Part shown: positions 23,716 through 63,629 of the stretch, piece after piece
How the letters are laid out: each line of letters begins with the position of its first letter
How positions within the stretch are numbered: the stretch's first letter is position 1
Source of the DNA: Macrostomum lignano
Taxonomy: Eukaryota
Direction: 5' to 3'
DNA: 64,000 nucleotides
Assembly: GCA_002269645.1 (NCBI GenBank)
Contig: NIVC01003333.1
Coordinates: forward strand, 1 to 64,000
Position numbers and translations under genes: made by a program
The notes under the pieces: generated by a model
The model's database searches: none
Seen by the model: the letters and a program-made list of their open reading frames with translations, nothing else
What the model was told of the DNA's origin: nothing

Positions 23716-24802
23716 ACTGACTCAAAATTGAATCGGAAGTGAAATCCGACTGCTGCCCCCGCTGGAAAACTGCCAGTTTGTCAGTTGTCATTCTCTACTC
23801 GCTCCCAGATCCCAGGCTCAGATGCATGACAATCCAGTGTCAGACAGCTGATCGATGCAACTGACTCCTGCATCCTCAGCTGCTGATTTTCTCAAGCTGA
23901 GCACATGATTTGGTCGGCTCTTTGTTCCAAATCAAATTTGCGCCCTTTTCAATCGCTTCATTCTTTCGATTCTAGCTCGTACCGAACATTCTTTTCTAGG
24001 GATGCTTTTTTATCACTATACTCATCTCTAACATGTATAAACTACACTATTAACCACTACTCATAAACTTTTCAAAAGCTTATTACTGTCGCTAGCAGCC
24101 CCATACTTCTGCATGGAACAGATGGGGCTGCTGGAGCTACTCAAACTGATGCTGAGCCCAGTCCGTAAACATGTGAACCCCATGCACACGCTTTCAAAAC
24201 ACATCCCTCACTGGCAGAGAGTGCAACCCGGATGACAGCTATTAGTCTTGTTGCTTATCCCTCTAATTAAAGTTGTTAAATAATCTTTCGTAAAAGTTTC
24301 CCGTAGCTGAGCGCCCAGCGACTGTTTGAATTTCATTTCACACACGAGGGGTCTCCGCTGCGCTCAGTTGACGCACGCAAAACTGCAGAGGAAATCACCA
24401 GCCAGCCCAGGCAGTTCCCTCAGTCCCACTGCCATCGAGAGGAGTTGATGAGGCCAACTTTGTCAGGATTCTGCCGGCTCCCTGGCCCGGAGACCGCTGC
24501 GCTGAGGGCTTCGCTCTGCTCTCCTGCCTTGCCTGCCATGACAAATTCGAATCTGACTGCCTCAACTGGCAGTCCTGTGCTCCCTCACTCCGCTGCTCCT
24601 GTTGCCATCAATTCATCATTTGCTTCCTGCTGGCGCTCGGCTTGTGCAGTCGGTGACGCCACTCTCTCTACTGACTCTCCGCTCTTGGAAATCTGCATGT
24701 TCCGAATGTGTATTGTGAAAGTCTTTGCAAACAATATTTTGCATGTCCCGTGCGATTCACTGCAAAATTAGAAAGCTGTCTGTTCAATGTCCACTGCACA
24801 GT

Positions 24803-25566
24803 GTCCTCTGCCCATGTCACTGAACAAATAAATTAGAAACACGCTTTGCTGACACATGCATTAGCAAGATAGAAAGCTTTCAGTTTTTAAGCACTTTGTC
24901 TTTTGTCCTTTGTCCTCTGTCCTTTGTCCTCTGTCCTCTGCCCATGTCACTGAACAAATAAATTAGAAACACGCTTTGCTGACACATGCATTAGCAAGAT
25001 AGAAAGATTTCAGTTTTTAAGCACTTTGTCTTTTGTCCTTTGTCCTCTGTCCTTTGTCCTCTGTCCTCTGCCCATGTCACTGAACAAATAAATTAGAAAC
25101 ACGCTTTGCTGACACATGCATTAGCAAGATAGAAAGCTTTCAGTTTTTAAGCACTTTGTCTTTTGTCCTTTGTCCTCTGTCCTTTGTCCTCTGTCCTCTG
25201 TCCTTTGTCCTCTGTCCTTTGTCCTCTGTCCTTTGTCCTCTGTCCTTTGTCCTCTGTCCTTTGTCCTCTGTCCTTTGTCCTCTGTCCTTTGTCCTCTGTC
25301 CTTTGTCCTCTGTCCTTTGTCCTCTGTCCTTTGTCCTCTATCCTTTGTCCTCTGTCCTTTGTCCTCTGTCCTTTGTCCTCTGTCCTTTGTCCTCTGTCCT
25401 TTGTCCTCTGTCCTTTGTCCTCTGTCCTTTGTCCTCTGTCCTTTGTCCTCTGTCCTTTGTCCTCTGTCCTTTGTCCTCTGTCCTTTGTCCTCTGTCCTTT
25501 GTCCTCTGTCCTTTGTCCTCTGTCCTTTGTCCTCTGTCCTTTGTCCTCTGTCCTCTGTCTTTTGTC
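24803..25566. repeat. 130-bp unit x3 whose internal 7-mer (TGTCCTT/TGTCCTC) is expanded to ~420 bp in the third copy
   Basis: CCCATGTCAC recurs at 24811, 24941 and 25071; pure 7/14-bp array from ~25150 to 25566. Confidence 0.93.
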
Positions 25567-36739: not shown

Positions 36740-39410
36740 TGCAGAATTCGAGTCAGAAGAGTCCCAGTCAGCAGAGGCCCAGTCCGAAGAATCCCTGTCA
36801 GCAGAGGCCCAGTCAGCAGAGGCCCAGTCAGTAGAGTCCCAGTCAGCAGAGGCCCAGTCAGTAGAGTCGCAGTCAGCAGAGGCCCAGTCAGTAGAGTCGC
36901 AGTCAGCAGAGGCCCAGTCAGCAGAGTCCCAGTCAGCAGAGGCCCAGTCAGCAGAGGCCCAGTCAGCAGAGTCCCAGTCAGCAGAGGCCCAGTCAGCAGA
37001 GGCCCAGTCAGTAGAGTCCCAGTCAGCAAAGGCCCAGTCAGTAGAGTCCCAGTCAGCAGAGGCCCAGTCATAGAGTCCCAGTCAGCAGAGGCCCAGTCAG
37101 TAGAGTCGCAGTCAGCAGAGGCCCAGTCAGCAGAGTCCCAGTCAGCAGAGGCCCAGTCAGTAGAGTCGCAGTCAGCAGAGACCCAGTCAGTAGAGTCCCA
37201 GTCAGCAGAGGCCCAGTCAGTAGAGTCCCAGTCAGCAGAGGCCCAGTCAGTAGAGTCCCAGTCAGTAGAGTCCCAGTCAGTAGAGTCCCAGTCAGCAGAG
37301 TCCCAGTCATAGAGTCCCAGTCAGTAGAGTCCCAGTCAGCAGAGGCCCAGTCAGCAGAGGCCCAGTCAGTAGAGTCCCAGTCAGTAGAGTCCCAGTCGGC
37401 AGAGGCCCAGTCCTGCAGTAGAGTCCCAGTCAGTAGAGTCCCAGTCGGCAGAGGCCCAGTCAGTAGAGTCCCAGTCAGTAGAGTCCCAGTCAGTAGAGTC
37501 CCAGTCAGTAGAGTCCCAGTCAGCAGAGTCCCAGTCAGTAGAGTCCCAGTCAGTAGAGTCCCAGTCAGTAGAGTCCCAGTCAGTAGAGTCCCAGTCGGCA
37601 GAGGCCCAGTCCTGCAGTAGAGTCCCAGTCAGTAGAGTCCCAGTCGGCAGAGGCCCAGTCAGTAGAGTCCCAGTCAGTAGAGTCCCAGTCAGTAGAGTCC
37701 CAGTCAGTAGAGTCCCAGTCAGTAGAGTCCCAGTCAGTAGAGTCCCAGTCAGTAGAGTCCCAGTCAGCAAAGGCCCAGTCAGTAGAGTCCCAGTCAGCAG
37801 AGGCCCAGTCATAGAGTCCCAGTCAGCAGAGGCCCAGTCAGTAGAGTCGCAGTCAGCAGAGGCCCAGTCAGCAGAGTCCCAGTCAGCAGAGGCCCAGTCA
37901 GTAGAGTCGCAGTCAGCAGAGACCCAGTCAGTAGAGTCCCAGTCAGCAGAGGCCCAGTCAGTAGAGTCCCAGTCAGCAGAGGCCCAGTCAGTAGAGTCCC
38001 AGTCAGTAGAGTCCCAGTCAGTAGAGTCCCAGTCAGCAGAGTCCCAGTCATAGAGTCCCAGTCAGTAGAGTCCCAGTCAGCAGAGGCCCAGTCAGCAGAG
38101 GCCCAGTCAGTAGAGTCCCAGTCAGTAGAGTCCCAGTCGGCAGAGGCCCAGTCCTGCAGTAGAGTCCCAGTCAGTAGAGTCCCAGTCGGCAGAGGCCCAG
38201 TCAGTAGAGTCCCAGTCAGTAGAGTCCCAGTCAGTAGAGTCCCAGTCAGTAGAGTCCCAGTCAGCAGAGTCCCAGTCAGTAGAGTCCCAGTCAGTAGAGT
38301 CCCAGTCAGTAGAGTCCCAGTCAGTAGAGTCCCAGTCGGCAGAGGCCCAGTCCTGCAGTAGAGTCCCAGTCAGTAGAGTCCCAGTCGGCAGAGGCCCAGT
38401 CAGTAGAGTCCCAGTCAGTAGAGTCCCAGTCAGTAGAGTCCCAGTCAGTAGAGTCCCAGTCAGCAGAGTCCCAGTCAGTAGAGTCCCAGTCAGTAGAGTC
38501 CCAGTCAGTAGAGTCCCAGTCAGCAGAGTCCCAGTCATAGAGTCACAGTCAGTAGAGTCCCAGTCAGTAGAGTCCCAGTCAGCAGAGGCCCAGTCAGCAG
38601 AGGCCCAGTCAGTAGAGTCGCAGTCAGCAGAGGCCCAGTCAGTAGAGTCCCAGACAGTAGAGTCCCAGTCGGCAGAGGCCCAGTCAGTAGAGTCCCAGTC
38701 AGTAGAGTCCCAGTCAGTAGAGTCCCAGTCAGTAGAGTCCCAGTCAGTAGAGTCCCAGTCAGTAGAGTCCCAGTCAGTAGAGTCCCAGTCAGTAGAGTCC
38801 CAGTCAGTAGAGTCCCAGTCAGTAGAGTCCCAGTCAGTAGAGTCCCAGTCAGTAGAGTCCCAGTCAGTAGAGTCCCAGTCAGTAGAGTCCCAGTCAGTAG
38901 AGTCCCAGTCAGCAGAGTCCCAGTCAGTAGAGTCCCAGTCAGTAGAGTCCCAGTCAGCAGAGTCCCAGTCATAGAGTCACAGTCAGTAGAGTCCCAGTCA
39001 GTAGAGTCCCAGTCAGCAGAGGCCCAGTCAGTAGAGTCCCAGTCAGCAGAGGCCCAGTCAGCAGAGGCCCAGTCAGTAGAGTCGCAGTCAGCAGAGGCCC
39101 AGTCAGTAGAGTCCCAGTCAGTAGAGTCCCAGTCGGCAGAGGCCCAGTCAGTAGAGTCCCAGTCAGTAGAGTCCCAGTCAGTAGAGTCCCAGTCAGTAGA
39201 GTCCCAGTCAGTAGAGTCCCAGTCAGTAGAGTCCCAGTCAGTAGAGTCCCAGTCAGTAGAGTCCCAGTCAGCAGAGTCCCAGTCAGTAGAGTCCCAGTCA
39301 GCAGAGGCCCAGTCAGTAGAGTCCCAGTCAGCAAAGGCCCAGTCAGTAGAGTCCCAGTCAGCAGAGTCCCAGTCAGTAGAGTCCCAGTCAGCAGAGGCCC
39401 AGTCAGTAGA
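36740..39410. repeat. 15-bp satellite (CCCAGTCAGTAGAGT), ~2.7 kb, with 741-bp higher-order duplication
   Basis: Variant pattern at 37068-37808 recurs at 37809-38549. Confidence 0.97.
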
Positions 39411-39735
39411 GTTTTTAATTACGACTTTACTCTCAGAGCTGCTCTCAGAAGTTCGTGAAAGCACGAAAGGGGATGTCAACTTAAGCACCAGAATGGAGCC
39501 CGAAGTTCAGCTCCGGACCAAACCGACTGCAATCGATAACTTATCGGCCCAGACGACTAGAATCGCCGAGACATCCCATCCGGGTCTTTTCCTTGGGGTC
39601 CCAGGGGATAAAGGGGATAAAATGGGGATCTCATGTCAACTTAAGGTTCTGGAATGGAGCCCGAAGTTCAGCTCGGGACCAAAGCGACTGCAATCGATAA
39701 CTTGTCGGCCCAGACGACTAGAATCGCCGAGACAT

Positions 39736-40600
39736 TCGCTGTGCCACTATGTTCCGGTATGTCATTGAGTGCTGCTTTGCTGCCATTAGGCAGGACAAAT
39801 GTTTTAACGAGAGGCACAAACCGAATCAGTGGCTGCAGTCAGCTGGCTTCAGCGAGCGCAGCCAATTAGACGTTATCGAGAACTCGATGGCAAAGTACAA
39901 TCGGGCGTTTCCACGTTTTGAATCATTTAAACAGCTGCCAACGTCATGGACAGGGCTATCGTTGTTCGAATTCGGTCAGAAGTTCATGCGCCGAGTGCTC
40001 TTGTCCAATAAACTGGACGAAATTGAGCAGCTGCACTTCAACTGTGATCTGACGCGTGTCCCCCCTGCTAACACAACGGCATGGATTGCCGAAAACCCGC
40101 TGGATCCAAAAAGCTCGGGGTTCCCCGAATTCACACAGAATCTGACAGATGTTTCGGTGGGTCCGTATCAACTATATCAAGCCGATGATTACATTCAAAA
40201 CATTCGTGTCAATGAGGTTCTCGGTCTACGAAGGTGACTCCTGGAGAGACTTTGAGTCACTCACATCCGAACTTCCGAGCCACCTCAAGTATTGGAAGTT
40301 TCGGTAAGAGACGCAGCCAGAAAACTGGAGCAACCGATTCGGTCGGTGGCATCCGTCTTGGATTTTTTCTAGCTGTCGTTTTCTCGCTCCATAATTCGAA
40401 ATCCTACCGCGTGATTCTTAAGAGTGAGTGACAGCAGCGGACAATCGCTTTGGTTTTAGAGATCCAGGATTGCAACTTCTTCATGGCTACTACTCGTCAG
40501 CAAAAGCTGGAGGTAGGACTGCAGGCTGCGATTGTCATGTAATGGCAGTGCTCAAACTCCTGGACTGCTACGCTTACCACCAAGATAGCTATCGAAGGTC
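39736..40600 (+). pseudogene. C-terminal fragment of a PIF/Harbinger-ISL2EU-Spy type DDE transposase with SWIM-like segment
   Basis: RCATMFRYVIECCFAAIRQ (catalytic-E motif RxVIE), DVSVGPYQLYQADDYI, SLHNSKSYRVIL, GYYSSAKAGGRTAGCDCHVMAVL. Spread over three frames with stops; N-terminal DD region missing. Confidence 0.7.
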
Positions 40601-40788
40601 TGGTACTAGCCTTCGCTTTGTTGATTCCGCTCTTCCACGCAGCCTTCCTTGTTGCCAGTCTTCATGCCAGAGAAAATGCTTTACCACAGCAGCGAAAGCC
40701 TACTGAGCAACAGTTTAGCGGCCAGCAAGAGGCGTTTCAGTCAGCCAGCAGAAGCTCAGGATCCAAGCCTCAGTCTTCAAGAGTCTTT

Positions 40789-41520
40789 GGTCTTCAAAAC
40801 CATGGTCAGCAGTGCTACGCAATTGTTTTTGTACTGCTTCACTGCATCAGCAGCAAAGTCCAGCTCTTTCAGCCGCTCAGAGGTGGGGCAGTGAACATCG
40901 CAATGACAAACCTGATGACGTCTATGGCGACTGAGCAAGCGTAGATCAACTTTTCGAAGCCAACCGAAGCCGATATCCGCAGCAGTTTGCGCCAAGACAG
41001 CAACACTGCTGCTAACAGTGCATTCTGCCAGAGTCGCAGCAGCAGCGTCATTGCCTAATCGAATTTACACGTGCGGTAGTTGCCTGACTAGCACGGATGA
41101 GCTGCCCATAGGAGTTCTGGATAGTCGTATCCTCAGCATCTCCTTGCAGGAGTTTTCAACCGCGCCGTTAATTCTAGACGGTCTCTACGCTGCTTTTACG
41201 GCACCAAAGCACGTCCCATGCACCAACACCAACTGTGCAGCTGATCAGGTCTCTAACGGCAGAGTGACCCTGATGCATATAGATCGCATTGGAACCGATG
41301 GTCAAAAACTGAATACGCAAGTCTGTTGGACAATCCGAGCAGGTAACATCTCCAGCTTGGGATGTCCAATGTTCACAGTGTCCCATTACGGTATAGTACG
41401 CCCTTGGAAGGGCACTATACATCTTGTGTCCTGAAAGATAGAGTATGGAATAAGCTGGACGACATGAGAGTTCCAAAAAACTACAATCCATTCGTTCATG
41501 AGCAATCCAAGGACCACTGA
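40789..41520 (+). pseudogene. USP (peptidase C19) deubiquitinase-like domain inside the transposon
   Basis: Cys box GLQNHGQQCY (40789-40818), zinc-ribbon pairs TCGSC and CTNTNC, His box VSHYG...EGHYTSCVLKDRVWNKLDDMRV (41407-41472, shifted frame). Repeated at 46781-47512 and 51158-51889. Confidence 0.72.
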
Positions 41521-42071
41521 AGTCACTTCATTAAACTTAGTTGTCCTTGGAGCCCTGCTGCAAGTATAAAGAGACCCATGGGATCATCTGCGAGAATGTT
41601 TACACAAAAACCCTTTCTGCAAACTAATGACCATACCGTTTCATTTTGTTTAAAAAAGCATCCGGAGCCTTGCTTTGGGCTCCATTCTAGAGACTTAAGT
41701 TGACATGAGATTCCCATTTTATCCCCTTTATCCCCTGGGACCCCAAGGAAGGGACCCGGATGGGATGTCTCGGCGATTCTAGTCGTCTGGGCCGACAAGT
41801 TATCGATTGCAGTCGGTTTGGTCCGGAGCTGAACTTCGGGCTCCATTCTGGTGCTTAAGTTGACATCCCCTTTGCTCTCAGAGTTTCTTCCCCAAAACAA
41901 AAAAAGCCAAGAAACAGCGCTTAATGCAATCACCGAAGTGAACTCGGATATTCGAAAAGTCACTGTTTATTTTTCATATTCCACACAGAGATCTTTCAGT
42001 AAGTATTGTCAGTAGCATTCTGACGGCGTGAGCTGTGCAGAACGCAGAATAGAACTCGTTGCTTTTCATCT

Positions 42072-43374: not shown

Positions 43375-45403
43375 TCGAGTCAGTAGAGTCGCAGTCAGCA
43401 GAGGCCCAGTCCGAAGAATCCCTGTCAGCAGAGGCCCAGTCAGCAGAGGCCCAGTCAGTAGAGTCCCAGTCAGCAGAGGCCCAGTCAGTAGAGTCGCAGT
43501 CAGCAGAGGCCCAGTCAGTAGAGTCGCAGTCAGCAGAGGCCCAGTCAGCAGAGTCCCAGTCAGCAGAGGCCCAGTCAGCAGAGGCCCAGTCAGCAGAGTC
43601 CCAGTCAGCAGAGGCCCAGTCAGCAGAGGCCCAGTCAGTAGAGTCCCAGTCAGCAAAGGCCCAGTCAGTAGAGTCCCAGTCAGCAGAGGCCCAGTCATAG
43701 AGTCCCAGTCAGCAGAGGCCCAGTCAGTAGAGTCGCAGTCAGCAGAGACCCAGTCAGTAGAGTCCCAGTCAGCAGAGGCCCAGTCAGTAGAGTCCCAGTC
43801 AGCAGAGGCCCAGTCAGTAGAGTCCCAGTCAGCAGAGTCCCAGTCAGTAGAGTCCCAGTCAGCAGAGTCCCAGTCATAGAGTCCCAGTCAGTAGAGTCCC
43901 AGTCAGCAGATTCCCAGTCAGCAGAGGCCCAGTCAGTAGAGTCCCAGTCAGTAGAGTCCCAGTCGGCAGAGGCCCAGTCCTGCAGTAGAGTCCCAGTCAG
44001 TAGAGTCCCAGTCGGCAGAGGCCCAGTCAGTAGAGTCCCAGTCAGTAGAGTCCCAGTCAGTAGAGTCCCAGTCAGTAGAGTCCCAGTCAGCAGAGTCCCA
44101 GTCAGTAGAGTCCCAGTCAGTAGAGTCCCAGTCAGTAGAGTCCCAGTCAGTAGAGTCCCAGTCGGCAGAGGCCCAGTCCTGCAGTAGAGTCCCAGTCAGT
44201 AGAGTCCCAGTCGGCAGAGGCCCAGTCAGTAGAGTCCCAGTCAGTAGAGTCCCAGTCAGTAGAGTCCCAGTCAGTAGAGTCCCAGTCAGCAGAGTCCCAG
44301 TCAGTAGAGTCCCAGTCAGTAGAGTCCCAGTCAGTAGAGTCCCAGTCAGCAGAGTCCCAGTCATAGAGTCACAGTCAGTAGAGTCCCAGTCAGTAGAGTC
44401 CCAGTCAGCAGAGGCCCAGTCAGCAGAGGCCCAGTCAGTAGAGTCGCAGTCAGCAGAGGCCCAGTCAGTAGAGTCCCAGACAGTAGAGTCCCAGTCGGCA
44501 GAGGCCCAGTCAGTAGAGTCCCAGTCAGTAGAGTCCCAGTCAGTAGAGTCCCAGTCAGTAGAGTCCCAGTCAGTAGAGTCCCAGTCAGTAGAGTCCCAGT
44601 CAGTAGAGTCCCAGTCAGTAGAGTCCCAGTCAGTAGAGTCCCAGTCAGTAGAGTCCCAGTCAGTAGAGTCCCAGTCAGTAGAGTCCCAGTCAGTAGAGTC
44701 CCAGTCAGTAGAGTCCCAGTCAGTAGAGTCCCAGTCAGTAGAGTCCCAGTCAGTAGAGTCCCAGTCAGTAGAGTCCCAGTCAGCAGAGTCCCAGTCAGTA
44801 GAGTCCCAGTCAGTAGAGTCCCAGTCAGCAGAGTCCCAGTCATAGAGTCACAGTCAGTAGAGTCCCAGTCAGTAGAGTCCCAGTCAGCAGAGGCCCAGTC
44901 AGTAGAGTCCCAGTCAGCAGAGGCCCAGTCAGCAGAGGCCCAGTCAGTAGAGTCGCAGTCAGCAGAGGCCCAGTCAGTAGAGTCCCAGTCAGTAGAGTCC
45001 CAGTCGGCAGAGGCCCAGTCAGTAGAGTCCCAGTCAGTAGAGTCCCAGTCAGTAGAGTCCCAGTCAGTAGAGTCCCAGTCAGTAGAGTCCCAGTCAGTAG
45101 AGTCCCAGTCAGTAGAGTCCCAGTCAGTAGAGTCCCAGTCAGTAGAGTCCCAGTCAGTAGAGTCCCAGTCAGTAGAGTCCCAGTCAGTAGAGTCCCAGTC
45201 AGTAGAGTCCCAGTCAGTAGAGTCCCAGTCAGTAGAGTCCCAGTCAGTAGAGTCCCAGTCAGCAGAGTCCCAGTCAGTAGAGTCCCAGTCAGCAGAGGCC
45301 CAGTCAGTAGAGTCCCAGTCAGCAAAGGCCCAGTCAGTAGAGTCCCAGTCAGCAGAGTCCCAGTCAGTAGAGTCCCAGTCAGCAGAGGCCCAGTCAGTAG
45401 AGT
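43375..45403. repeat. 15-bp satellite, ~2.0 kb
   Basis: Same variant order as the first array but lacking the 741-bp duplication and with longer pure runs. Confidence 0.97.
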
Positions 45404-45459: not shown

Positions 45460-47862
45460 GGGGATGTCAACTTAAGCACCAGAATGGAGCCCGAAGTTCA
45501 GCTCCGGACCAAACCGACTGCAATCGATAACTTGTCGGCCCAGACGACTAGAATCGCCGAGACATCCCATCCGGGTCTTTTCCTTGGGGTCCCAGGGGAT
45601 AAAGGGGATAAAATGGGGATCTCATGTCAACTTAAGGTTCTGGAATGGAGCCCGAAGTTCAGCTCGGGACCAAAGCGACTGCAATCGATAACTTGTCGGC
45701 CCAGACGACTAGAATCGCCGAGACATTCGCTGTGCCACTATGTTCCGGTATGTCATTGAGTGCTGCTTTGCTGCCATTAGGCAGGACAAATGTTTTAACG
45801 AGAGGCACAAACCGAATCAGTGGCTGCAGTCAGCTGGCTTCAGCGAGCGCAGCCAATTAGACGTTATCGAGAACTCGATGGCAAAGTACAATCGGGCGTT
45901 TCCACGTTTTGAATCATTTAAACAGCTGCCAACGTCATGGACAGGGCTATCGTTGTTCGAATTCGGTCAGAAGTTCATGCGCCGAGTGCTCTTGTCCAAT
46001 AAACTGGACGAAATTGAGCAGCTGCACTTCAACTGTGATCTGACGCGTGTCCCCCCTGCTAACACAACGGCATGGATTGCCGAAAACCCGCTGGATCCAA
46101 AAAGCTCGGGGTTCCCCCGAATTCACACAGAATCTGACAGATGTTTCGGTGGGTCCGTATCAACTATATCAAGCCGATGATTACATTCAAAACATTCGTG
46201 TCAATGAGGTTCTCGGTCTACGAAGGTGACTCCTGGAGAGACTTTGAGTCACTCACATCCGAACTTCCGAGCCACCTCAAGTATTGGAAGTTTCGGTAAG
46301 AGACGCAGCCAGAAAACTGGAGCAACCGATTCGGTCGGTGGCATCCGTCTTGGATTTTTTCTAGCTGTCGTTTTCTCGCTCCATAATTCGAAATCCTACC
46401 GCGTGATTCTTAAGAGTGAGTGACAGCAGCGGACAATCGCTTTGGTTTTAGAGATCCAGGATTGCAACTTCTTCATGGCTACTACTCGTCAGCAAAAGCT
46501 GGAGGTAGGACTGCAGGCTGCGATTGTCATGTAATGGCAGTGCTCAAACTCCTGGACTGCTACGCTTACCACCAAGATAGCTATCGAAGGTCTGGTACTA
46601 GCCTTCGCTTTGTTGATTCCGCTCTTCCACGCAGCCTTCCTTGTTGCCAGTCTTCATGCCAGAGAAAATGCTTTACCACAGCAGCGAAAGCCTACTGAGC
46701 AACAGTTTAGCGGCCAGCAAGAGGCGTTTCAGTCAGCCAGCAGAAGCTCAGGATCCAAGCCTCAGTCTTCAAGAGTCTTTGGTCTTCAAAACCATGGTCA
46801 GCAGTGCTACGCAATTGTTTTTGTACTGCTTCACTGCATCAGCAGCAAAGTCCAGCTCTTTCAGCCGCTCAGAGGTGGGGCAGTGAACATCGCAATGACA
46901 AACCTGATGACGTCTATGGCGACTGAGCAAGCGTAGATCAACTTTTCGAAGCCAACCGAAGCCGATATCCGCAGCAGTTTGCGCCAAGACAGCAACACTG
47001 CTGCTAACAGTGCATTCTGCCAGAGTCGCAGCAGCAGCGTCATTGCCTAATCGAATTTACACGTGCGGTAGTTGCCTGACTAGCACGGATGAGCTGCCCA
47101 TAGGAGTTCTGGATAGTCGTATCCTCAGCATCTCCTTGCAGGAGTTTTCAACCGCGCCGTTAATTCTAGACGGTCTCTACGCTGCTTTTACGGCACCAAA
47201 GCACGTCCCATGCACCAACACCAACTGTGCAGCTGATCAGGTCTCTAACGGCAGAGTGACCCTGATGCATATAGATCGCATTGGAACCGATGGTCAAAAA
47301 CTGAATACGCAAGTCTGTTGGACAATCCGAGCAGGTAACATCTCCAGCTTGGGATGTCCAATGTTCACAGTGTCCCATTACGGTATAGTACGCCCTTGGA
47401 AGGGCACTATACATCTTGTGTCCTGAAAGATAGAGTATGGAATAAGCTGGACGACATGAGAGTTCCAAAAAACTACAATCCATTCGTTCATGAGCAATCC
47501 AAGGACCACTGAAGTCACTTCATTAAACTTAGTTGTCCTTGGAGCCCTGCTGCAAGTATAAAGAGACCCATGGGATCATCTGCGAGAATGTTTACACAAA
47601 AACCCTTTCTGCAAACTAATGACCATACCGTTTCATTTTGTTTAAAAAAGCATCCGGAGCCTTGCTTTGGGCTCCATTCTAGAGACTTAAGTTGACATGA
47701 GATTCCCATTTTATCCCCTTTATCCCCTGGGACCCCAAGGAAGGGACCCGGATGGGATGTCTCGGCGATTCTAGTCGTCTGGGCCGACAAGTTATCGATT
47801 GCAGTCGGTTTGGTCCGGAGCTGAACTTCGGGCTCCATTCTGGTGCTTAAGTTGACATCCCC
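45460..47862 (+). mobile_element. Spy-group DNA transposon, copy 2, 2403 bp
   Basis: Same TIRs and AAA|TTT flanks as copy 1; one extra C in a homopolymer. Confidence 0.88.
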
Positions 47863-49369: not shown

Positions 49370-49618
49370 AGTCAGAAGAGTCCCAGTCAGCAGAGGCCCA
49401 GTCAGCAGAGGCCCAGTCAGCAGAGGCCCAGTCAGTAGATTCCCAGTCAGCAGAGGCCCAGTCAGCAGAGGCCCAGTCAGTAGAGTCCCAGTCAGCAGAG
49501 GCCCAGTCAGTAGAGTCCCAGTCAGCAGAGTCCCAGTCAGCAGAGGCCCAGTCATAGAGTCCCAGTCAGCAGAGGCCCAGTCATAGAGTCCCAGTCAGCA
49601 GAGGCCCAGTCAGTAGAG
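49370..49618. repeat. 15-bp satellite, short (~250 bp)
   Basis: Same monomer as the long arrays. Confidence 0.95.
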
Positions 49619-49675: not shown

Positions 49676-52239
49676 GGGGATGTCAACTTAAGCACCAGAA
49701 TGGTGCCCGAAGTTCAGCTCCGGACCAAAGCGACTGCAATCGATAACTTGTCGGCCCAGACGACTAGAATCGCCGAGACATCCCATCCGGGTCCCTTCCT
49801 TGGGGTCCCAGGGGATAAAGGGGATAAAATGGGAATCTCATGTCAACTTAAGGCTCTGGAATGGAGCCCAAAGCAAGGCTCCGGACCAAACCGACTGCAA
49901 TCGATAACTTGTCGGCCCAGACGACTAGAATCGCCGAGACATCCCATCTGGGTCTTTTCCTTGGGGTCCCAGGGGATAAAGGGGATAAAATGGGGATCTC
50001 ATGTCAACTTAAGGCTCTGGAATGGAGCCCGAAGTTCAGCTCGGGACCAAAGCGACTGCAATCGATAACTTGTCGGCCCAGACGACTAGAATCGCCGAGA
50101 CATTCGCTGTGCCACTATGTTCCGGTATGTCATTGAGTGCTGCTTTGCTGCCATTAGGCAGGACAAATGTTTTAACGAGAGGCACAAACCGAATCAGTGG
50201 CTGCAGTCAGCCGGCTTCAGCGAGCGCAGCCAATTAGACGTTATCGAGAACTCGATGGCAAAGTACAATCGGGCGTTTCCACGTTTTGAATCATTTAAAC
50301 AGCTGCCAACGTCATGGACAGGGCTATCGTTGTTCGAATTCGGTCAGAAGTTCATGCGCCGAGTGCTCTTGTCCAATAAACTGGACGAAATTGAGCAGCT
50401 GCACTTCAACTGTGATCTGACGCGTGTCCCCCCTGCTAACACAACGGCATGGATTGCCGAAAACCCGCTGGATCCAAAAAGCTCGGGGTTCCCCCGAATT
50501 CACACAGAATTTGACAGATGTTTCGGTGGGTCCGTATCAACTATATCAAGCCGATGATTACATTCAAAACATTCGTGTCAATGAGGTTCTCGGTCTACGA
50601 AGGTGACTCCTGGAGAGACTTTGAGTCGCTCACATCCGAACTTCCGAGCCACCTCAAGTATTGGAAGTTTCGGTAAGAGACGCAGCCAGAAAACTGGAGC
50701 AACCGATTCGGTCGGTGGCATCCGTCTTGGATTTTTTCTAGCTGTCGTTTTCTCGCTCCATAATTCGAAATCCTACCGCGTGATTCTTAAGAGTGAGTGA
50801 CAGCAGCGGACAATCGCTTTGGTTTTAGAGATCCAGGATTGCAACTTCTTCATGGCTACTACTCGTCAGCAAAAGCTGGAGGTAGGACTGCAGGCTGCGA
50901 TTGTCATGTAATGGCAGTGCTCAAACTCCTGGGCTGCTACGCTTACCACCAAGATAGCTATCGAAGGTCTGGTACTAGCCTTCGCTTTGTTGATTCCGCT
51001 CTTCCACGCAGCCTTCCTTGTTGCCAGTCTTCATGCCAGAGAAAATGCTTTACCACAGCAGCGAAAGCCTACTGAGCAACAGTTTAGCGGCCAGCAAGAG
51101 GCGTTTCAGTCAGCCAGCAGAAGCTCAGGATCCAAGCCTCAGTCTTCAAGAGTCTTTGGTCTTCAAAACCATGGTCAGCAGTGCTACGCAATTGTTTTTG
51201 TACTGCTTCACTGCATCAGCAGCAAAGTCCAGCTCTTTCAGCCGCTCAGAGGTGGGGCAGTGAACATCGCAATGACAAACCTGATGACGTCTATGGCGAC
51301 TGAGCAAGCGTAGATCAACTTTTCGAAGCCAACCGAAGCCGATATCCGCAGCAGTTTGCGCCAAGACAGCAACACTGCTGCTAACAGTGCATTCTGCCAG
51401 AGTCGCAGCAGCAGCGTCATTGCCTAATCGAATTTACACGTGCGGTAGTTGCCTGACTAGCACGGATGAGCTGCCCATAGGAGTTCTGGATAGTCGTATC
51501 CTCAGCATCTCCTTGCAGGAGTTTTCAACCGCGCCGTTAATTCTAGACGGTCTCTACGCTGCTTTTACGGCACCAAAGCACGTCCCATGCACCAACACCA
51601 ACTGTGCAGCTGATCAGGTCTCTAACGGCAGAGTGACCCTGATGCATATAGATCGCATTGGAACCGATGGTCAAAAACTGAATACGCAAGTCTGTTGGAC
51701 AATCCGAGCAGGTAACATCTCCAGCTTGGGATGTCCAATGTTCACAGTGTCCCATTACGGTATAGTACGCCCTTGGAAGGGCACTATACATCTTGTGTCC
51801 TGAAAGATAGAGTATGGAATAAGCTGGACGACATGAGAGTTCCAAAAAACTACAATCCATTCGTTCATGAGCAATCCAAGGACCACTGAAGTCACTTCAT
51901 TAAACTTAGTTGTCCTTGGAGCCCTGCTGCAAGTATAAAGAGACCCATGGGATCATCTGCGAGAATGTTTACACAAAAACCCTTTCTGCAAACTAATGAC
52001 CATACCGTTTCATTTTGTTTAAAAAAGCATCCGGAGCCTTGCTTTGGGCTCCATTCTAGAGACTTAAGTTGACATGAGATTCCCATTTTATCCCCTTTAT
52101 CCCCTGGGACCCCAAGGAAGGGACCCGGATGGGATGTCTCGGCGATTCTAGTCGTCTGGGCCGACAAGTTATCGATTGCAGTCGGTTTGGTCCGGAGCTG
52201 AACTTCGGGCTCCATTCTGGTGCTTAAGTTGACATCCCC
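49676..52239 (+). mobile_element. Spy-group DNA transposon, copy 3, 2564 bp
   Basis: Same termini; one additional 161-bp subterminal unit at the left end (units at 49700, 49861, 50022). Confidence 0.88.
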
Positions 52240-52590: not shown

Positions 52591-53747
52591 GCTGTTTCTT
52601 GAAGATGTGAACTTGTTGCAGCCGATAATCTTGTAGGAGGATTTGTAGGCTTGATTTTGTGCCATTGCTCAGTGTTATATTTATAGATTCAAGATCCCAT
52701 AAAACACGGCTGCAATCGTTTAAATCACGCACTGCTTGTCAAGCAGCTCCCAGAAAATTATTCGACTTTCTGCTCAGGTTGCAATAAATTTTCATGTCCC
52801 TGGATTGAGTTTGATTGATGAAGCAGAGTTAATTCGCATGGCGTTAACTAAGATTTGAAATTTTCTCCACGCCTGCAAAAATAAGCGAAACTGGCTTAGA
52901 TGCAATCCATCTGCTTTTGAGCTGTGTGCTGGCACGCTGGAGGCTGTTCATACGGACTTTTGTTCGTTACCATGACAACAAAATCTCAATCTTTTGCGGT
53001 TCCTCCAAAATCTCCTAAAAATCTACCTGTAAATGTTCATATACTACATATACTATATACTATACTCATATACTATACTAGCTAAACAGAGTTTCATGAT
53101 TGACAAGCTCTTAATCTCTGAAGCTCTTAGATTCCAAGTTCGATGCAAAACAACTCAAGAAGGCGCTATCGAACGTGACAGAAGCACATGACCGTTGGCC
53201 CTGCTTTCAGGAAGCGGCACTGAGCTGGCAACATAAAATTTTGTACAAATTTAGTCGAAAATTAAAAAATCGATCACATATATCTACCGACAAACCATTT
53301 TTAGTACGAGTATAGTGTGTTAAATCGACTAACTCTTCGAAACCAACAAGTAATTAAGTAGGCAAAATCGGATGTCTGTAGCCTTCAATACCTCTGCGTT
53401 CTCGCGAACGCAAACAAAACAAACAAGTTAGCAAAAACACGCTTACCAAAAATCACGCCTTTTTTAATTATTATTTAACGTGGGGTGGGGTTAGCAAATT
53501 GAGGGGGTTGGCTCATGTACATTAAATCAAGAAAAAATACATGTACAATTAACTAAGTAAAACCCCAAAAATATGACAAACAATGAACCTTCAGAACATA
53601 GTGGAACTTAAATTTTAACCAAATAATACATACAAGTTCCTCTTATAGACTTTTTATTACATGTATGTCTTAGAATGGAATCCGAATTTAATATGTCATA
53701 TCTCATACAAAATGATAAGAGAAATGATAAGAGTCTGCAGAATTCGA

Positions 53748-53998
53748 GTCAGAAGAGTCCCAGTCAGCAGAGGCCCAGTCAGCAGAGGCCCAGTCAGCAG
53801 AGGCCCAGTCAGTAGAGTCCCAGTCAGTAGAGTCCTAGTCAGCAGAGGCCCAGTCAGCAGAGTCCCAGTCAGTAGAGTCCCAGTCAGTAGAGTCCCAGTC
53901 AGTAGAGTCCCAGTCAGTAGAGTCCCAGTCAGTAGAGTCCCAGTCAGCAGAGTCCCAGTCAGTAGAGTCCCAGTCAGCAGAGGCCCAGTCAGTAGAGT
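53748..53998. repeat. 15-bp satellite, short (~250 bp)
   Basis: Same monomer; followed by an empty AAATTT junction. Confidence 0.95.
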
Positions 53999-54255
53999 TT
54001 TTAATTATGACTTTACTCTCAGAGCTGCTCTCAGAAGTTCGTGAAAGCACGAAATTTGCTCTCAGAGTTTCTTCCCCAAAACAAAAAAAGCCAAGAAACA
54101 GCGCTTAATGCAATCACCGAAGTGAACTCGGATATTCGAAAAGTCACTGTTTATTTTTCATATTCCACACAGAGATCTTTCAGTAAGTATTGTCAGTAGC
54201 ATTCTGACGGCGTGAGCTGTGCAGAACGCAGAATAGAACTCGTTGCTTTTCATCT

Positions 54256-55234: not shown

Positions 55235-57480
55235 CTTCATGAGCCTTGATATCTCAGCAATTCCCCCAGTAAGCCTCGAAATCGCAGCAATTAATCATCT
55301 ACGCAATTCTCCCAGCCCAGTAAACTTTGACATGTCAGCAATTCCCTCAGGAAGCCTTGAAATCTCAGCAATTTCCTCAATAAGCCTCGACATCGCAGCA
55401 ATTACTTCAGCCTTGACATCTTCGCAATTCTCCCAGCCCAGTAAGCCTTGACATACATCCCAACAACCCAACTCCCCTCCCCCAACAATTCAGCCATCCC
55501 CCATGAGCCTTAATATATCAATAATTAAGTCATCTCCCATGAGCCTTGATACCTCAGCAATTCCCATAGTAAGTCTTGACATCTCAGAAATTTCCTCAGT
55601 AAGCCTTGGCATCTCAGCGATTCCCCCAGTAGGCCTTGGCATCTCAGAAATTTCATCAGTGAGCCTTGACATCTCAGCGATTCCCCCAGTAAGCCTTGGC
55701 ATCTCAGAAATTTTATCAGTGAGCCTTGACATCTCAGCGATTCCCCCAGTAAGCCTTGGCATCTCAGAAATTTTATCAGTGAGCCTTGACATCTCAGCGA
55801 TTCCCCCAGTAAGCCTTGAAATCTCAGAAATTTCTTCAGTAAGACTTGGCGGCATCATGGCGGTGAACCATTGCTAAACTGCTGGTGAACCATTGCTAAA
55901 GTGATAGGGAACCACTGTACTTTTTTTATAAATCCTACTTTAAACAAAAGAAAACACAACGAAAGAAAAAGCGAAAAAGAATCACCATGTCAACCATAAA
56001 AAAGCGGTCTGTCGAGCATAAAAGACTCCATGGGAATTGCTAAAATGTCTGGGCTGGTATGGGAAATTGCTTTGATGTCAAGACTCATATAGGAGAATTT
56101 CCAAGATCTCAAGGCTTAGGGGGGAATTGCTATAATGATTTGATTCTGGGGAGAATCGCTTTGATTTCAAGTTTCATTTGTGAAATTGCTGAGTTATATA
56201 AAGGCTCATTGGAAAATTGCTTTGCTGTCAAAGCTCATTGGGATAATTACTGGAATGCTGTGGCTGTTGGGGAATGGCATAGATTGATAGGGTAAGGTAT
56301 ATGTAAGGGTTAAACCATAAATGAATCGGCCTGTCAAACATTAAGACTCATCAAGGAATGTCAAAGCTCATGGGGGATATCTGGATTATACTGTGGCTCA
56401 AGGCTCAGGGAAACGCTGTGATTGCAAGACTTGGGGATATTGCCTAAATTTTGTGGCTCAATTTGGAGTTTCTGAGATATCAAGGCTCATTATGGAATCA
56501 TGAAATGTCAATGCTCACGGGGGATCCCTGTAATGCTGTAGACTGTGGCTCTTTGGGTATTGCTGAGATGCTAAGGTTTACAGGACACATGAGACTGGCT
56601 GAGATGTCAAAGGCTCATAAGGGAATAGCTGAAATTCACGAATTGTCAAGAGTAATTGCTGAAATTCTGTAGTTCATATTGAGAATTGCTGAGATGCTGT
56701 GACTTGGCAGGTTTAGGGTTAGGGTTCAACAATAAGACTCATGTAAATTGCCAAGATATCAAAAGGTTAGCCGCTAAATTTTAAGGCTCATTGGGGAAAG
56801 TTTTAGATTTCAAAAGCTCATGGTGGAATTGCTGAAATTCTTGGGCTGAGAAGGAGCTGCTGAACTGCTGTGACTCGGCTGCAGGTTAAGGGCTATGGTT
56901 TGGGTTCAATTATAAAACAATCGTCGTGTCAGACATAAAGGATTCCTGGTGGAATTGCTAAGATTAAAGGCTCATGGGGTGAATTATTATACTTACAGAT
57001 AAATGCTTTGTCTTGCTTGCAGAATTGCTTGCAGGTCAAAGCTTTCGGCGAAATATAGATTTAAAGGCATATGAGGCTTATGATAATTGATGAGATGCCA
57101 AGGCTTACTGGGGGAATCGCTGAGATGTTAAGGCTTACTGAGGAAATTTCTGAGATGCCAAGGCTTACTGGGGGAATCGCTGAGATGTCAAGGCTTACTG
57201 ATGAAATTTCTGAGATTCCAAGGCTTACTGGGGGAATCGCTGAGATGTCAAGGCTTACTGATGAAATTTCTGAGATTTCAAGGCTTACTGGGGAATCGCT
57301 GAGATGTCAAGGCTTACTGATGAAATTTCTGAGATTTCAAGGCTTACTGGGGGAATCGCTGAGATGTCAAGGCTTACTGATGAAATTTCTGAGATTTCAA
57401 GGCTTACTGGGGGAATCGCTGAGATGTCAAGGCTTACTGATGAAATTTCTGAGATGCCAAGGCTTACTGATGAAATTTCT
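55235..57480. repeat. 30/60-bp satellite in two oppositely oriented blocks (55235-55850 forward, 56030-57480 reverse)
   Basis: CTTGACATCTCAGCGATTCCCCCAGTAAGC on the left; its reverse complement GCTTACTGGGGGAATCGCTGAGATGTCAAG on the right. Confidence 0.9.
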
Positions 57481-57897
57481 GGCAATGGTTCACTGGCACT
57501 GTTCCGCAAAATCTGCAAGCAGATGGTCACTCATCTCCATATGCTTCTTCAATAATCAAAACCATTCGAAATATTTGCAACTTGCACTTTAAATTTGATT
57601 TGCAATCCTCTTGCATTTTTATTACTTCATTGTAAGTCAGATTAGCACTGCTCACCCAGATTACTAATACCCTTAGCAAATTAGCACATACAGCAGATTA
57701 GCACTGCTCTAGAATACTAACGCGGCCCCTAGCAAAAGTATCTTTTAATTAAATGTTTAACATCTCCATGAATCTGCATCGGATACAATCATTATTATCA
57801 CAGGTCACAAAGAAAAATTCTTTGCTTCAATGCAGACTCGAACTCGACATTCTGCTTAGCTTCTGCCTGATACTGACTGCCTACTGCGGCTATTGTG

Positions 57898-58238
57898 CCA
57901 GTCAGTAGAGTCCCAGTCAGTAGAGTCCCAGTCAGCAGAGGCCCAGTCAGCAGAGGCCCAGTCAGCAGAGGACCAGTCAGCAGAGTCCCAGTCAGCAGAG
58001 GCCCAGTCAGCAGAGGCCCAGTCAGCAGAGGACCAGTCAGCAGAGTCCCAGTCAGTAGAGTCCCAGTCAGTAGAGTCCCAGTCAGTAGAGTTTTTAATTA
58101 TGACTTTACTCTCAGAGTTGCTCTCAGAAGTTCGTGAAAGCACGAAATTTGCTCTCAGAGTTTCTTCCCCAAAACATAAAAGCCAAGAAACAGCGCTTAA
58201 TGCAATCACCGAAGTGAACTCGGATATTCGAAAAGTCT
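57898..58238. repeat. Cassette remnant: short 15-bp satellite, junction, empty AAATTT site and 3' flank, cut before the poly(A) signal
   Basis: Matches the cassette until ...GAAAAGTC, then switches to retroelement sequence. Confidence 0.88.
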
Positions 58239-58239
58239 T

Positions 58240-60374: not shown

Positions 60375-60810
60375 ACTCATGACAGCGTAGCGCTGGAGAC
60401 TGTAGCCGTGATGCCAATAGCGCTCATTACAGTTAGCGCTGGAGACAGTGGCCGTGATGCCAATAGCGCTCATTACAGTTAGCGCTGGAGACAGTAGCCG
60501 TGATGCCAATAGCGCTCATTACAGTTAGCGCTGGAGACAGTGGCCGTGATGCCAATAGCGCTCATTACAGTTAGCGCTGGAGACAGTGGCCGTGATGCCA
60601 ATAGCGCTCATTACAGTTAGCGCTGGAGACAGTAGCCGTGATGCCAATAGCGCTCATTACAGTTAGCGCTGGAGACTGTAGCCGTGATGCCAATAGCGCT
60701 CATTACAGTTAGCGCTGGAGACTGTAGCCGTGATGCCAATAGCGCTCATTACAGTTAGCGCTGGAGACAGTAGCCGTGATGCCAATAGCGCTCATTACAG
60801 TTAGCGCTGA
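60375..60810. repeat. 46-bp minisatellite, ~9 copies
   Basis: ACAGTTAGCGCTGGAGACAGTRGCCGTGATGCCAATAGCGCTCATT units. Confidence 0.95.
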
Positions 60811-63620: not shown

Positions 63621-63629
63621 CTTCAGTTA

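What the first reader, a model, noticed from the sequence alone, without database searches (positions are those of the whole stretch)
39469..41870. Spy-type transposon carrying a USP deubiquitinase domain behind its DDE transposase and SWIM-like segment
Seen in sequence: between ~200-bp TIRs the decayed coding region runs in one orientation from a transposase catalytic-E motif (RYVIECC) through GPYQL, SLHNSKSY and a SWIM-like AKAGGRTAGCDCH segment. It continues into a USP-like Cys box (GLQNHGQQCY), two CxxC-type pairs (TCGSC, CTNTNC) and a His box (HYG...GHYTSCVL...WNKLDD) hidden in a frame the ORF track does not report. Established: these two boxes define peptidase C19 deubiquitinases, and some transposons carry Ulp1- or OTU-type proteases. 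Inference: an autonomous parent encodes a transposase linked to a USP, possibly protecting the transposase from degradation or stripping ubiquitin from silencing chromatin. I do not know a described Spy-USP combination but cannot check.
Basis: partly seen in the sequence, partly recalled or inferred. Interest (0 to 1): 0.85.

Follow-up and report, generated by a model that had tools for sequence, protein, structure and literature searches.

The report
Spy-like transposon with deubiquitinase domain
The window holds a broken, non-autonomous copy of a cut-and-paste transposon whose intact relatives in the same genome make one ~980-residue protein, a Spy-type DDE transposase fused to a ubiquitin-specific protease; the fusion is real, conserved and little described.

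Summary
Observation confirmed. Window 39469-41870 is a 2.4-kb element with 210-nt TIRs. It sits exactly between AAA and TTT, and three paralogous empty sites in the same window (54054/55, 58147/48, 61317/18) show there is no target-site duplication. Its interior is a 5'-deleted, multiply frameshifted remnant matching residues 366-976 of intact 978-988-aa ORFs elsewhere in the genome; at least 12 copies keep a 995-codon open frame.

Those ORFs read C2H2 finger, HTH_Tnp_4, DDE (D201/D295/E376), a conserved region with a degenerate SWIM-like motif, a linker, then a C-terminal USP. The USP passes Pfam UCH (37-42 bits, cut-off 23.9). A profile of it finds 101 solved USPs. AlphaFold gives pLDDT 90 and Foldseek returns only USPs at the top. 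The catalytic Cys, His and Asp and the zinc-ribbon cysteines are conserved.

The same transposase-USP architecture occurs in three lineages of this genome and in at least five divergent public protein lineages (23-29% identity). It is therefore a family feature, not a one-off capture.

The Spy papers read do not mention it. An IS5-like transposase plus peptidase C19 was noted once, in Trichomonas (2010), and UCH domains occur in Helitron-like elements. What the protease does is inferred, not shown.

The parts
39466..39468 (.). Host AAA half of the AAA|TTT target site
   Evidence: Empty paralogous sites read ...GAAAGCACGAAA|TTTGCTCTCAGAG. All independent insertions of the family are flanked AAA...TTT.
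39469..39678 (+). Left terminal inverted repeat (terminus GGGGATGTCAACTTAAG)
   Evidence: Inverted repeat I1, 94% complementary. It is 97% identical to the TIR of the intact 978-aa-ORF element on C749.
39491..39735 (+). About 1.6 copies of the 161-bp subterminal repeat unit that builds the TIRs of this family
   Evidence: Direct repeat D2, spacing 161. The same unit occurs 5-12 or more times in the autonomous copies.
39737..40219 (+). Transposase remnant from the catalytic-E motif (RYVIECC, 39755-39775) to GPYQL (40160-40174). Everything upstream (C2H2 finger, HTH, both catalytic D) is deleted.
   Evidence: tblastn to residues 366-528 of the 988-aa ORF, 67% identity, E 4e-68.
40220..40646 (+). 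Conserved post-DDE region, frameshifted and with stops. It includes SLHNSKSY (40384-40407) and the degenerate SWIM-like motif AKAGGRTAGCDCH (40500-40538).
   Evidence: tblastn to residues about 529-671. The homologous column in relatives is CxCx(7-9)CxH.
40789..41520 (+). USP (peptidase C19) remnant spread over three or more frames: Cys box 40789-40818, QQHC box 40998-41009, zinc-ribbon pairs 41069-41083 and 41219-41236, His box 41410-41433, WNKLDD 41446-41463
   Evidence: 176.8 bits, E 3e-56, to the transposon-USP profile. 48-62% identity to the USP of the intact ORF. Pfam UCH only 12.7 bits on its own.
41661..41870 (-). Right terminal inverted repeat
   Evidence: Inverted repeat I1.
41871..41873 (.). 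Host TTT half of the target site
45460..47862 (+). Second copy of the same insertion, with identical flanks, carried along by a tandem segmental duplication
   Evidence: 100% identity over 2408 nt, the same flanks, and a duplicated 4.2-6.2 kb unit.
49676..52239 (+). Third copy of the same insertion, with one extra 161-bp TIR unit
   Evidence: (161-bp array at 49680-50103).
54043..54067 (.). Paralogous empty site (AAA|TTT junction at 54054/54055). Two more lie at 58136-58160 and 61306-61330.
   Evidence: The sequence equals the joined flanks of the element, with nothing duplicated or lost.

Best explanation
What it is: window 39469-41870 is a dead, non-autonomous internal-deletion derivative of a Spy-like cut-and-paste DNA transposon (PHIS / IS5-PIF-type DDE). 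It inserted once between AAA and TTT without a target-site duplication. It was then copied three times in the window, and four more times on contig C907, by segmental duplication. The same 2.4-kb deletion form also sits at three or more other sites.

What the family encodes: autonomous relatives make one ~980-aa protein. It reads C2H2 finger, HTH, DDE transposase (D201, D295, E376 in the C3075 ORF), a conserved ~300-aa region with a SWIM-type motif (degenerate here), a poorly conserved linker, then a compact ~270-aa USP deubiquitinase. The USP has an intact Cys-His-Asp triad and zinc ribbon.

How the window copy moved: its TIRs are 97% identical to those of the intact 978-aa-ORF family, so that transposase is the likely mobiliser.

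Function (inferred, not shown): the USP is an active deubiquitinase tethered in cis to the transposase. It removes ubiquitin from the transposase or transpososome, or from nearby chromatin or repair proteins. This would protect the machinery from ubiquitin-dependent turnover or restriction, or steer repair of the blunt breaks that Spy-type transposition leaves.
For: Shown:
- TIRs and termini.
- Filled versus empty sites inside the window, and AAA/TTT flanks at about 20 insertions.
- The seven near-identical copies share one set of flanks.
- Intact ORFs of 988 and 978 aa. Twelve loci have 995-codon open frames spanning both the transposase and the USP match.
- Pfam UCH 42.5 and 37.5 bits against a cut-off of 23.9, plus HTH_Tnp_4 and zf-C2H2.
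- The USP profile hits 101 PDB USP chains, best USP46 at E 2.7e-18.
- AlphaFold pLDDT 90.2. Foldseek gives 245 hits; the 50 shown are all USPs, TM 0.67-0.76.
- The catalytic C/H/D and zinc cysteines are invariant in 11 sequences.
- D/D/E columns are conserved in 15-17 of 17 homologues, including ones with full Pfam DDE_Tnp_4 hits of 49-78 bits.
- Non-synonymous divergence between lineages A and B is 0.38 in the USP, 0.64 in the linker and 0.20 in the DDE core, with synonymous sites saturated. This indicates constraint on the USP.
- The same architecture occurs in P0008, P0013, P0035, P0114 and the P0049 group, at 23-29% identity.
- TIR identity to the B family is 97%, against 64% for the interior.

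The functional idea has published parallels. Bao et al. proposed a repair role for transposon-borne OTU/Ulp1 (PMC2836005). The VTD-deubiquitinase study proposed that Helitron-borne deubiquitinases protect proteins needed for transposition (PMC9741609).
Against: - No activity, substrate or expression data exist.
- The window copy itself encodes nothing functional and fails Pfam UCH on its own.
- Pfam DDE_Tnp_4 does not hit the own-genome ORFs directly.
- D(93)D(80)E spacing and the GGGGATGT terminus do not fit the published Spy ranges.
- Many related transposases end right after the SWIM-like motif with no USP (P0003, P0005, P0006, P0007, P0178). The USP is therefore dispensable for this transposase type in general.
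- USP constraint is weaker than on the DDE core.
- Transposon boundaries of the external USP-bearing contigs could not be found.
Confidence: 0.85

Rival explanations
1. One-off capture: the USP-like stretch is a fragment of a host USP gene picked up by this particular deleted derivative, and is not a feature of the transposon family.
For: Non-autonomous elements often carry captured host fragments. The window copy alone gives no significant Pfam UCH hit.
Against: The USP lies in frame with the transposase in intact 978-988-aa ORFs at 13 or more loci. It is present in three divergent lineages of this genome and in at least five distant public lineages. Host USP genes score 100-239 bits to Pfam UCH, against 37-47 bits for the transposon USPs.
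Confidence: 0.02
2. The USP domain is a catalytically dead ubiquitin-binding or scaffold module (a pseudo-deubiquitinase). It would recruit the transposase to ubiquitinated chromatin rather than cleave ubiquitin.
For: Pseudo-enzymes are common among USPs. The domain is minimal and divergent (14-18% identity to solved USPs). Constraint is weaker than on the DDE core.
Against: The catalytic Cys, His and Asp are invariant, and the Cys-box Asn nearly so, across lineages only 18-40% identical. That is not expected if catalysis were dispensable.
Confidence: 0.1
3. The long ORFs are a host gene family derived from a domesticated transposase-USP fusion. The window element would be an unrelated MITE-like repeat that shares sequence with it.
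For: Transposase domestication is frequent. One lineage-C derivative (L066) keeps an open 473-aa frame with the HTH, SWIM-like and USP regions but no DDE core.
Against: The 988-aa and 978-aa ORFs lie inside long TIRs built of 161-bp units. Both ends of the C3075 element were read, flanked AAA...TTT; for C749 only the left end was reached. They are multi-copy, with a dozen near-identical ORFs. They share termini with the window element, for which filled and empty sites coexist.
Confidence: 0.03

Closest known systems
Spy transposons (PHIS superfamily; Han et al. 2014, PMC4122938; cgSpy, PMC11304231)
   Same: Insertion exactly between AAA and TTT with no target-site duplication. A single ORF. 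An N-terminal HTH. An IS5/PIF-type DDE with the R-x3-E motif. TIRs of very variable length with a G-rich terminus (cgSpy AAA|GGGCC..., here AAA|GGGGA...). Residues 1 to about 700 correspond in size to the ~700-aa Spy transposase.
   Different: An extra ~270-aa C-terminal USP that those papers do not mention. An N-terminal C2H2 finger. D(93)D(80)E rather than D(79-80)D(44-62)E. The terminus does not fit GGANNNNG. The TIRs are tandem arrays of a 161-bp unit, whereas the 2014 paper saw no subrepeat structure. Placement against named Spy reference sequences could not be tested.
Trichomonas vaginalis XP_001314237.1: transposase_11 (pfam01609) plus Peptidase C19, noted in Bao, Kapitonov & Jurka 2010 (PMC2836005), citing Gladyshev & Arkhipova 2009
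   Same: An IS4/IS5-type DDE transposase joined to a USP-class (C19) deubiquitinase in one protein. Relatives of the present family also hit PF01609.
   Different: A protist protein mentioned in one sentence, with no element structure, target site or family described there. I could not read the 2009 paper or compare sequences.
Ginger1 transposases with C-terminal OTU or Ulp1 domains, and Mutator-like elements with Ulp1 (PMC2836005)
   Same: A cut-and-paste DDE transposase carrying a C-terminal cysteine protease of the ubiquitin/SUMO system.
   Different: A different transposase superfamily (integrase-like, Mutator) and different protease clans (OTU, Ulp1/C48 rather than USP/C19).
Helitron-like elements (HLE2/Helentron) carrying UCH, OTU or VTD deubiquitinase domains (PMC11417382, PMC9741609)
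   Same: Transposon-borne deubiquitinase domains kept at conserved positions. Pfam UCH itself is reported in HLE2 subgroups. VTD domains were shown to be active deubiquitinases.
   Different: Rolling-circle RepHel elements, not DDE cut-and-paste elements.
Hyvu-Spy-1 of Hydra vulgaris (Table S1 of PMC11304231)
   Same: Catalogued as Spy, flanked AAA/TTT, with an unusually long 963-aa transposase close in size to the 955-1048-aa USP-bearing proteins found here.
   Different: Whether it carries a USP is a lead, not a result.

Membership tests
Spy group of the PHIS superfamily (Han et al. 2014) | Integration precisely between 5'-AAA and TTT-3' without target-site duplication | tested here: met
   Three empty paralogous sites in the window equal the joined flanks. 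About 20 independent insertions are flanked AAA...TTT with no direct repeat.
Spy group of the PHIS superfamily (Han et al. 2014) | Autonomous elements have TIRs and a single long ORF for a DDE transposase with an N-terminal HTH | tested here: met
   C3075 element: 6255 bp, both TIRs read, one 988-aa ORF. C749 element: one 978-aa ORF and the left TIR end read; the right TIR array runs past the fetched stretch. HTH_Tnp_4 hits of 25.4 and 22.7 bits are below the 27-bit cut-off. The window copy has lost this part.
Spy group of the PHIS superfamily (Han et al. 2014) | D(79-80)D(44-62)E spacing and the motif string D(19-29)K(29)D(18-40)D(11-19)P(18-28)R(3)E | tested here: not met
   D201, D295, E376 give D(93)D(80)E. 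The published motif string does not match, although R-x3-E is kept. The ranges describe the 2014 data set, so this lowers the claim of strict membership but does not exclude it.
Spy group of the PHIS superfamily (Han et al. 2014) | Terminal 5'-GGANNNNG-3' consensus | tested here: not met
   The terminus is GGGGATGT(C/G). The consensus is described only as 'relatively well conserved', and cgSpy (GGGCCTGG) also departs from it.
Spy group of the PHIS superfamily (Han et al. 2014) | Phylogenetic placement of the DDE domain with named Spy references, apart from ISL2EU and PIF/Harbinger | not testable with these tools
   No Repbase or Spy reference protein sequences were available. The tree contains only unnamed homologues.
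IS5 / PIF-Harbinger-type DDE transposase (Pfam DDE_Tnp_4, PF13359) | Significant Pfam DDE_Tnp_4 match on the protein itself | tested here: not met
   No hit at E<=1 on the 988-aa and 978-aa ORFs.
IS5 / PIF-Harbinger-type DDE transposase (Pfam DDE_Tnp_4, PF13359) | Homology to proteins that pass DDE_Tnp_4, with the catalytic D, D, E columns conserved | tested here: met
   P0050, P0053, P0055, P0058 (E 2e-10 to 1e-9 to the query across residues ~57-665) score 49-78 bits. P0007 (E 2e-56) scores 32.4 bits. In the 17-row alignment E376 is invariant, D295 is kept in 16 rows and D201 in 15.
Canonical PIF/Harbinger | 3-bp TWA target-site duplication and a second Myb/SANT ORF | tested here: not met
   There is no duplication. 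The autonomous copies examined have a single ORF of 150 or more residues.
USP deubiquitinase (peptidase C19, Pfam UCH PF00443) | Pfam UCH score above the gathering cut-off | tested here: met
   Intact relatives: 42.5 and 37.5 bits, cut-off 23.9. External fusions: 38.6-55.2 bits; P0114 falls below the cut-off at 20.8 bits. The window remnant alone gives 12.7 bits, below the cut-off.
USP deubiquitinase (peptidase C19, Pfam UCH PF00443) | Cys box with the catalytic Cys, and His box with the catalytic His and Asp | tested here: met
   H232 and D248 are invariant. C19 and N14 are present in every sequence that covers them. The zinc-ribbon cysteines C114, C117 and C163 are conserved. The window copy keeps GLQNHGQQCY, GHYTSC and WNKLDD.
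USP deubiquitinase (peptidase C19, Pfam UCH PF00443) | USP fold | tested here: met
   AlphaFold pLDDT 90.2, pTM 0.89. All 50 Foldseek matches shown are USPs, E about 1e-17 to 1e-15, TM 0.67-0.76. The profile hits 101 PDB USP chains.
USP deubiquitinase (peptidase C19, Pfam UCH PF00443) | Isopeptidase activity on ubiquitin or a ubiquitin-like modifier | not testable with these tools
   This needs a biochemical assay.
SWIM zinc finger (CxCxnCxH) | The four zinc ligands in the CxCxnCxH pattern | tested here: not met
   Relatives have it (for example P0055 CTCKTGARTVGCCAH, P0049 CTCESGMRTNSACEH). The own lineages read STS...GCDCH (A and the window) and SSS...GCDSH (B). There is no Pfam SWIM hit. 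The region is homologous to a SWIM-type motif but degenerate here.

The most novel reading that the evidence does not exclude
A widespread, old clade of Spy-like DDE transposases carries an active USP that is needed for efficient transposition. It would act either by shielding the transposase from ubiquitin-dependent destruction or by removing a ubiquitin mark that the host uses to restrict transposition or to process the blunt breaks. That would make it the first cut-and-paste transposase with its own USP-class deubiquitinase, and a direct handle on how ubiquitin signalling controls DNA transposition.
Probability: 0.3. Interest if true: 0.75.

Novelty: new variant of a known kind. Interest (0 to 1): 0.55.

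Why it matters
Transposon-borne proteases of the ubiquitin/SUMO system recur in unrelated element classes: Ulp1 in Mutator-like elements, OTU/Ulp1 in Ginger1, and OTU/VTD/UCH in Helitron-like elements. Their role in transposition is essentially untested.

This case offers a USP fused in one reading frame to a transposase of a group (Spy) that already has a working cell-culture assay (PMC11304231). About a dozen apparently intact copies exist in one genome, and natural USP-less relatives can serve as comparators. That makes the question of what a transposon gains from its own deubiquitinase directly testable.

For annotation, it also warns that USP-like hits in invertebrate genomes may be transposon-borne rather than host genes.

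Tried and rejected
- Pfam on the six separate window frame pieces gave no relevant hit. The stitched USP remnant was sub-threshold.
- The search for homologous proteins with the 988-aa ORF returned nothing, probably because of its word pre-filter. The exhaustive representative search worked instead.
- AlphaFold on the full-length protein with a 5-sequence alignment gave pLDDT 38. It says nothing about the DDE or SWIM-like regions, so I did not fold-search it.
- I searched for AAA...TTT-flanked TIRs in the two external USP-bearing contigs L067 and L068 and found none. Their status as transposons rests on homology only.
- The published Spy motif string did not match.
- dN/dS proper could not be computed because synonymous sites between lineages are saturated. 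I used pN against the linker instead.
- The USP+/USP- labelling on the transposase tree needs 6 changes. Several 'USP-' rows are truncated contigs, so single versus multiple acquisition stays open.
- Gladyshev & Arkhipova 2009 is not held.
- The linker has no conserved LxGG-type site, so I dropped the idea of self-cleavage by the USP (sequences).
Full report
**The element in the window.** The region 39466-41873 is bounded by inverted repeats of 213 nt, 94% complementary. The outermost three bases on each side are AAA and TTT, so the element proper runs from GGGGATGTCAAC at 39469 to GTTGACATCCCC at 41870. The left end holds about 1.6 copies of a 161-bp unit.

**Target site.** The window contains three copies of the element: 39469-41870, 45460-47862 and 49676-52239. 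All have identical flanks and lie inside a tandemly duplicated 4.2-6.2 kb unit that also holds a 15-bp minisatellite. Three further copies of that unit lack the element. At 54054/55, 58147/48 and 61317/18 they read GAAAG(C/T)ACGAAA|TTTGCTCTCAGAG, which is exactly the joined flanks. The insertion therefore went between AAA and TTT and duplicated nothing, which is the hallmark of Spy elements (PMC4122938). About 20 other insertions of the family in the genome are also flanked AAA...TTT, with unrelated sequence beyond.

The seven near-identical copies (three here, four on contig C907 in the opposite orientation) share one set of flanks. They represent a single insertion copied by duplication or by assembly of haplotypes. 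The same 2.4-kb structure also occurs at 87-91% identity at other sites (C139, C413, C692/C769, C3347), so the deletion derivative did transpose.

**Intact relatives.** The genome (764 Mb, 5269 contigs, a eukaryote) was searched with the window's two longest open pieces. This found long open frames that contain both pieces:
- a 1022-codon frame on C3075;
- 995-codon frames at twelve loci with identical scores;
- more distant or broken copies.

From the first ATG these give proteins of 988 aa (lineage A, L039) and 978 aa (lineage B, L047). A third, more distant lineage C (L064-L066) has the same layout.

The C3075 element is 6255 bp long. Its TIRs are made of about 5 (left) and about 8 (right) tandem 161-bp units, with ends AAA|GGGGATGTGAAC...GTTCACATCCCC|TTT. 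The C749 element has 6.7 units on the left and at least 12 on the right.

**Relation of the window copy to these ORFs.** tblastn of the 988-aa protein aligns window 39737-41502 collinearly to residues 366-976, with repeated frame changes and in-frame stops. The first 365 residues are deleted; these hold the zinc finger, the HTH and both catalytic aspartates. The copy is non-coding debris.

Its interior is only 64-69% identical in DNA to lineages B and A. Its TIR, however, is 97% identical to that of lineage B. The B transposase is therefore the likely mobiliser, and the TIRs were probably exchanged or homogenised between lineages.

**The transposase part.** Pfam finds a C2H2 finger at residues 5-25 and HTH_Tnp_4 at about 105-144, but no DDE model directly. 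An exhaustive HMMER search of 1.8 billion representative proteins gave 202 hits. Among them:
- P0007 (E 2e-56) passes DDE_Tnp_4;
- P0050, P0053, P0055 and P0058 (E about 1e-10, aligned over residues ~57-665) have full-length DDE_Tnp_4 hits of 49-78 bits.

In a joint 17-row alignment E376 is invariant, D295 is kept in 16 rows and D201 in 15. R-x3-E is kept in every row. The spacing D(93)D(80)E lies outside the range published for Spy, and the published motif string does not match.

Downstream of the E lies a conserved ~300-aa region. Its most striking column is CxCx(7-9)CxH in relatives, which is a SWIM-type pattern. In the own lineages the first two cysteines are lost. Published Spy transposases are about 580-700 aa, which matches residues 1 to about 700 here.

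**The USP part.**
- Pfam UCH scores 42.5 and 37.5 bits on lineages A and B, against a cut-off of 23.9.
- In an 11-sequence alignment of the domain from own and public sequences, the catalytic His and Asp are invariant. The Cys-box Cys and Asn are present wherever the sequence is complete. The zinc-ribbon cysteines are conserved.
- The profile finds 101 solved USP chains, best USP46 at E 2.7e-18.
- AlphaFold gives pLDDT 90.2.
- Foldseek returns 245 matches at E<=0.001. The 50 best are all USPs (USP8, USP21, USP1, USP15, USP2, USP46, USP18), with TM 0.67-0.76.
- Between lineages A and B synonymous sites are saturated. The non-synonymous proportion is 0.20 in the DDE core, 0.21 in the middle region, 0.38 in the USP and 0.64 in the linker. 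The USP is therefore constrained, though less than the transposase.
- The host's own USP genes score 100-239 bits to Pfam UCH. The transposon USP is not a recent copy of one of them.

**Distribution.** Public proteins with the same order of domains are:
- P0008 (1048 aa, a cluster of 20 members, 29% identity in the transposase part, UCH 47 bits);
- P0013 (955 aa, one alignment over residues 76-982, 26% identity);
- P0035 (1119 aa) and P0114 (1134 aa);
- the P0049/P0060/P0087/P0093 group.

Other homologues (P0003, P0005, P0006, P0007, P0178) end within 15 residues of the SWIM-like motif and have no USP. On a transposase tree the USP-bearing proteins are scattered; 6 changes are needed, but several 'USP-less' rows are truncated. 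One old gain with losses, or several gains, both remain possible. I could not find TIRs on the two external contigs I fetched.

**Literature.** The Spy paper, the PHIS survey and the cgSpy study do not mention ubiquitin, UCH or a protease. Full-text searches for transposase together with USP or UCH terms returned only Helitron work.

There are precedents of a looser kind:
- Bao, Kapitonov and Jurka (2010) noted in one sentence a Trichomonas vaginalis protein with transposase_11 plus Peptidase C19. They also described OTU/Ulp1 domains on Ginger1 transposases.
- HELIANO reports UCH domains in Helitron-like elements.
- VTD deubiquitinases of Helentrons are enzymatically active.
- Table S1 of the cgSpy paper lists a 963-aa Spy transposase in Hydra vulgaris without comment.

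**Mechanism.** Shown: a Spy-like element family encodes a transposase-USP fusion whose catalytic residues are conserved and under constraint. Inferred: the USP is active and works in cis on the transposase or transpososome, or on ubiquitinated chromatin or repair factors at the break. This would favour stability of the machinery or a repair outcome that benefits the element. I favour protection from ubiquitin-dependent turnover or restriction, with roughly 40% of the probability among functional readings. The existence of USP-less relatives shows the domain is an accessory, not part of the chemistry of transposition.

**Verdict.** The window element itself is an ordinary dead copy. The interest lies in the family: it is a new variant of a known kind and a tractable system. 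No step needed to be referred.

Noticed in passing
window 36751-39412, 43378-45403, 49370-49618, 53747-53998 (also 57898-58091, 62484-62644): Long arrays (up to 177 copies) of a 15-bp minisatellite, AGTCAGTAGAGTCCC, lie directly upstream of each filled or empty site. With a ~1.7-kb unique stretch they form a tandemly duplicated unit of 4.2-6.2 kb that exists both with and without the transposon.
   Followed up: partly
window 39491-39735 and 49680-50103; C3075 and C749 elements (L039/L061/L062, L047/L069/L070): The TIRs of this family are tandem arrays of a 161-bp unit with very variable copy number: 1.6 to 2.6 in the window, 5 to 12 or more in autonomous copies. The 2014 Spy paper reported no subrepeat structure in long Spy TIRs.
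   Followed up: partly
window 39466-39735 versus 39736-41660, compared with C749 and C3075: The window element's TIR is 97% identical to that of the lineage-B autonomous element. Its interior is only 64% (B) to 69% (A) identical. This suggests TIR exchange or homogenisation between diverged lineages, and cross-mobilisation.
   Followed up: partly
L066 (G000:C3474:51000-54200), ORF 1299-2717: A lineage-C internal-deletion copy keeps an open 473-aa frame. It joins the HTH region directly to the SWIM-like region and an apparently intact USP, with the DDE core removed. It could be a transposase-less USP protein (a regulator or domestication candidate) or merely a young deletion.
   Followed up: no
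G000 contig C907 (44536-80052) versus window contig C3333; host USP loci: The window's duplicated block recurs in reverse orientation on C907 with the same insertion. Most host USP genes appear as 2-4 near-identical loci. The assembly seems to hold uncollapsed haplotypes or a polyploid genome, so copy counts of the element are inflated.
   Followed up: no
L067 (ENA ERZ27294121 contig) 202-1944: Directly upstream of the 1048-aa transposase-USP gene lies a 580-aa ORF. The part I read (1380-1944) is rich in NGDP/NGGP repeats. It may be an N-terminal extension or a separate gene of that element.
   Followed up: no
P0016 (634 aa, public protein): This protein has a USP fragment (residues 40-213) N-terminal to a transposase match (287-603), the reverse of the usual order. 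It is probably a gene call running across two adjacent elements.
   Followed up: no
window 603-32406 and 55540-63998: The window is unusually rich in other tandem arrays, with periods of 14-179 bp. Examples: 20412-21070 (period 71), 24802-25200 (period 130), 57091-57469 (period 60). They are unrelated to the element.
   Followed up: no
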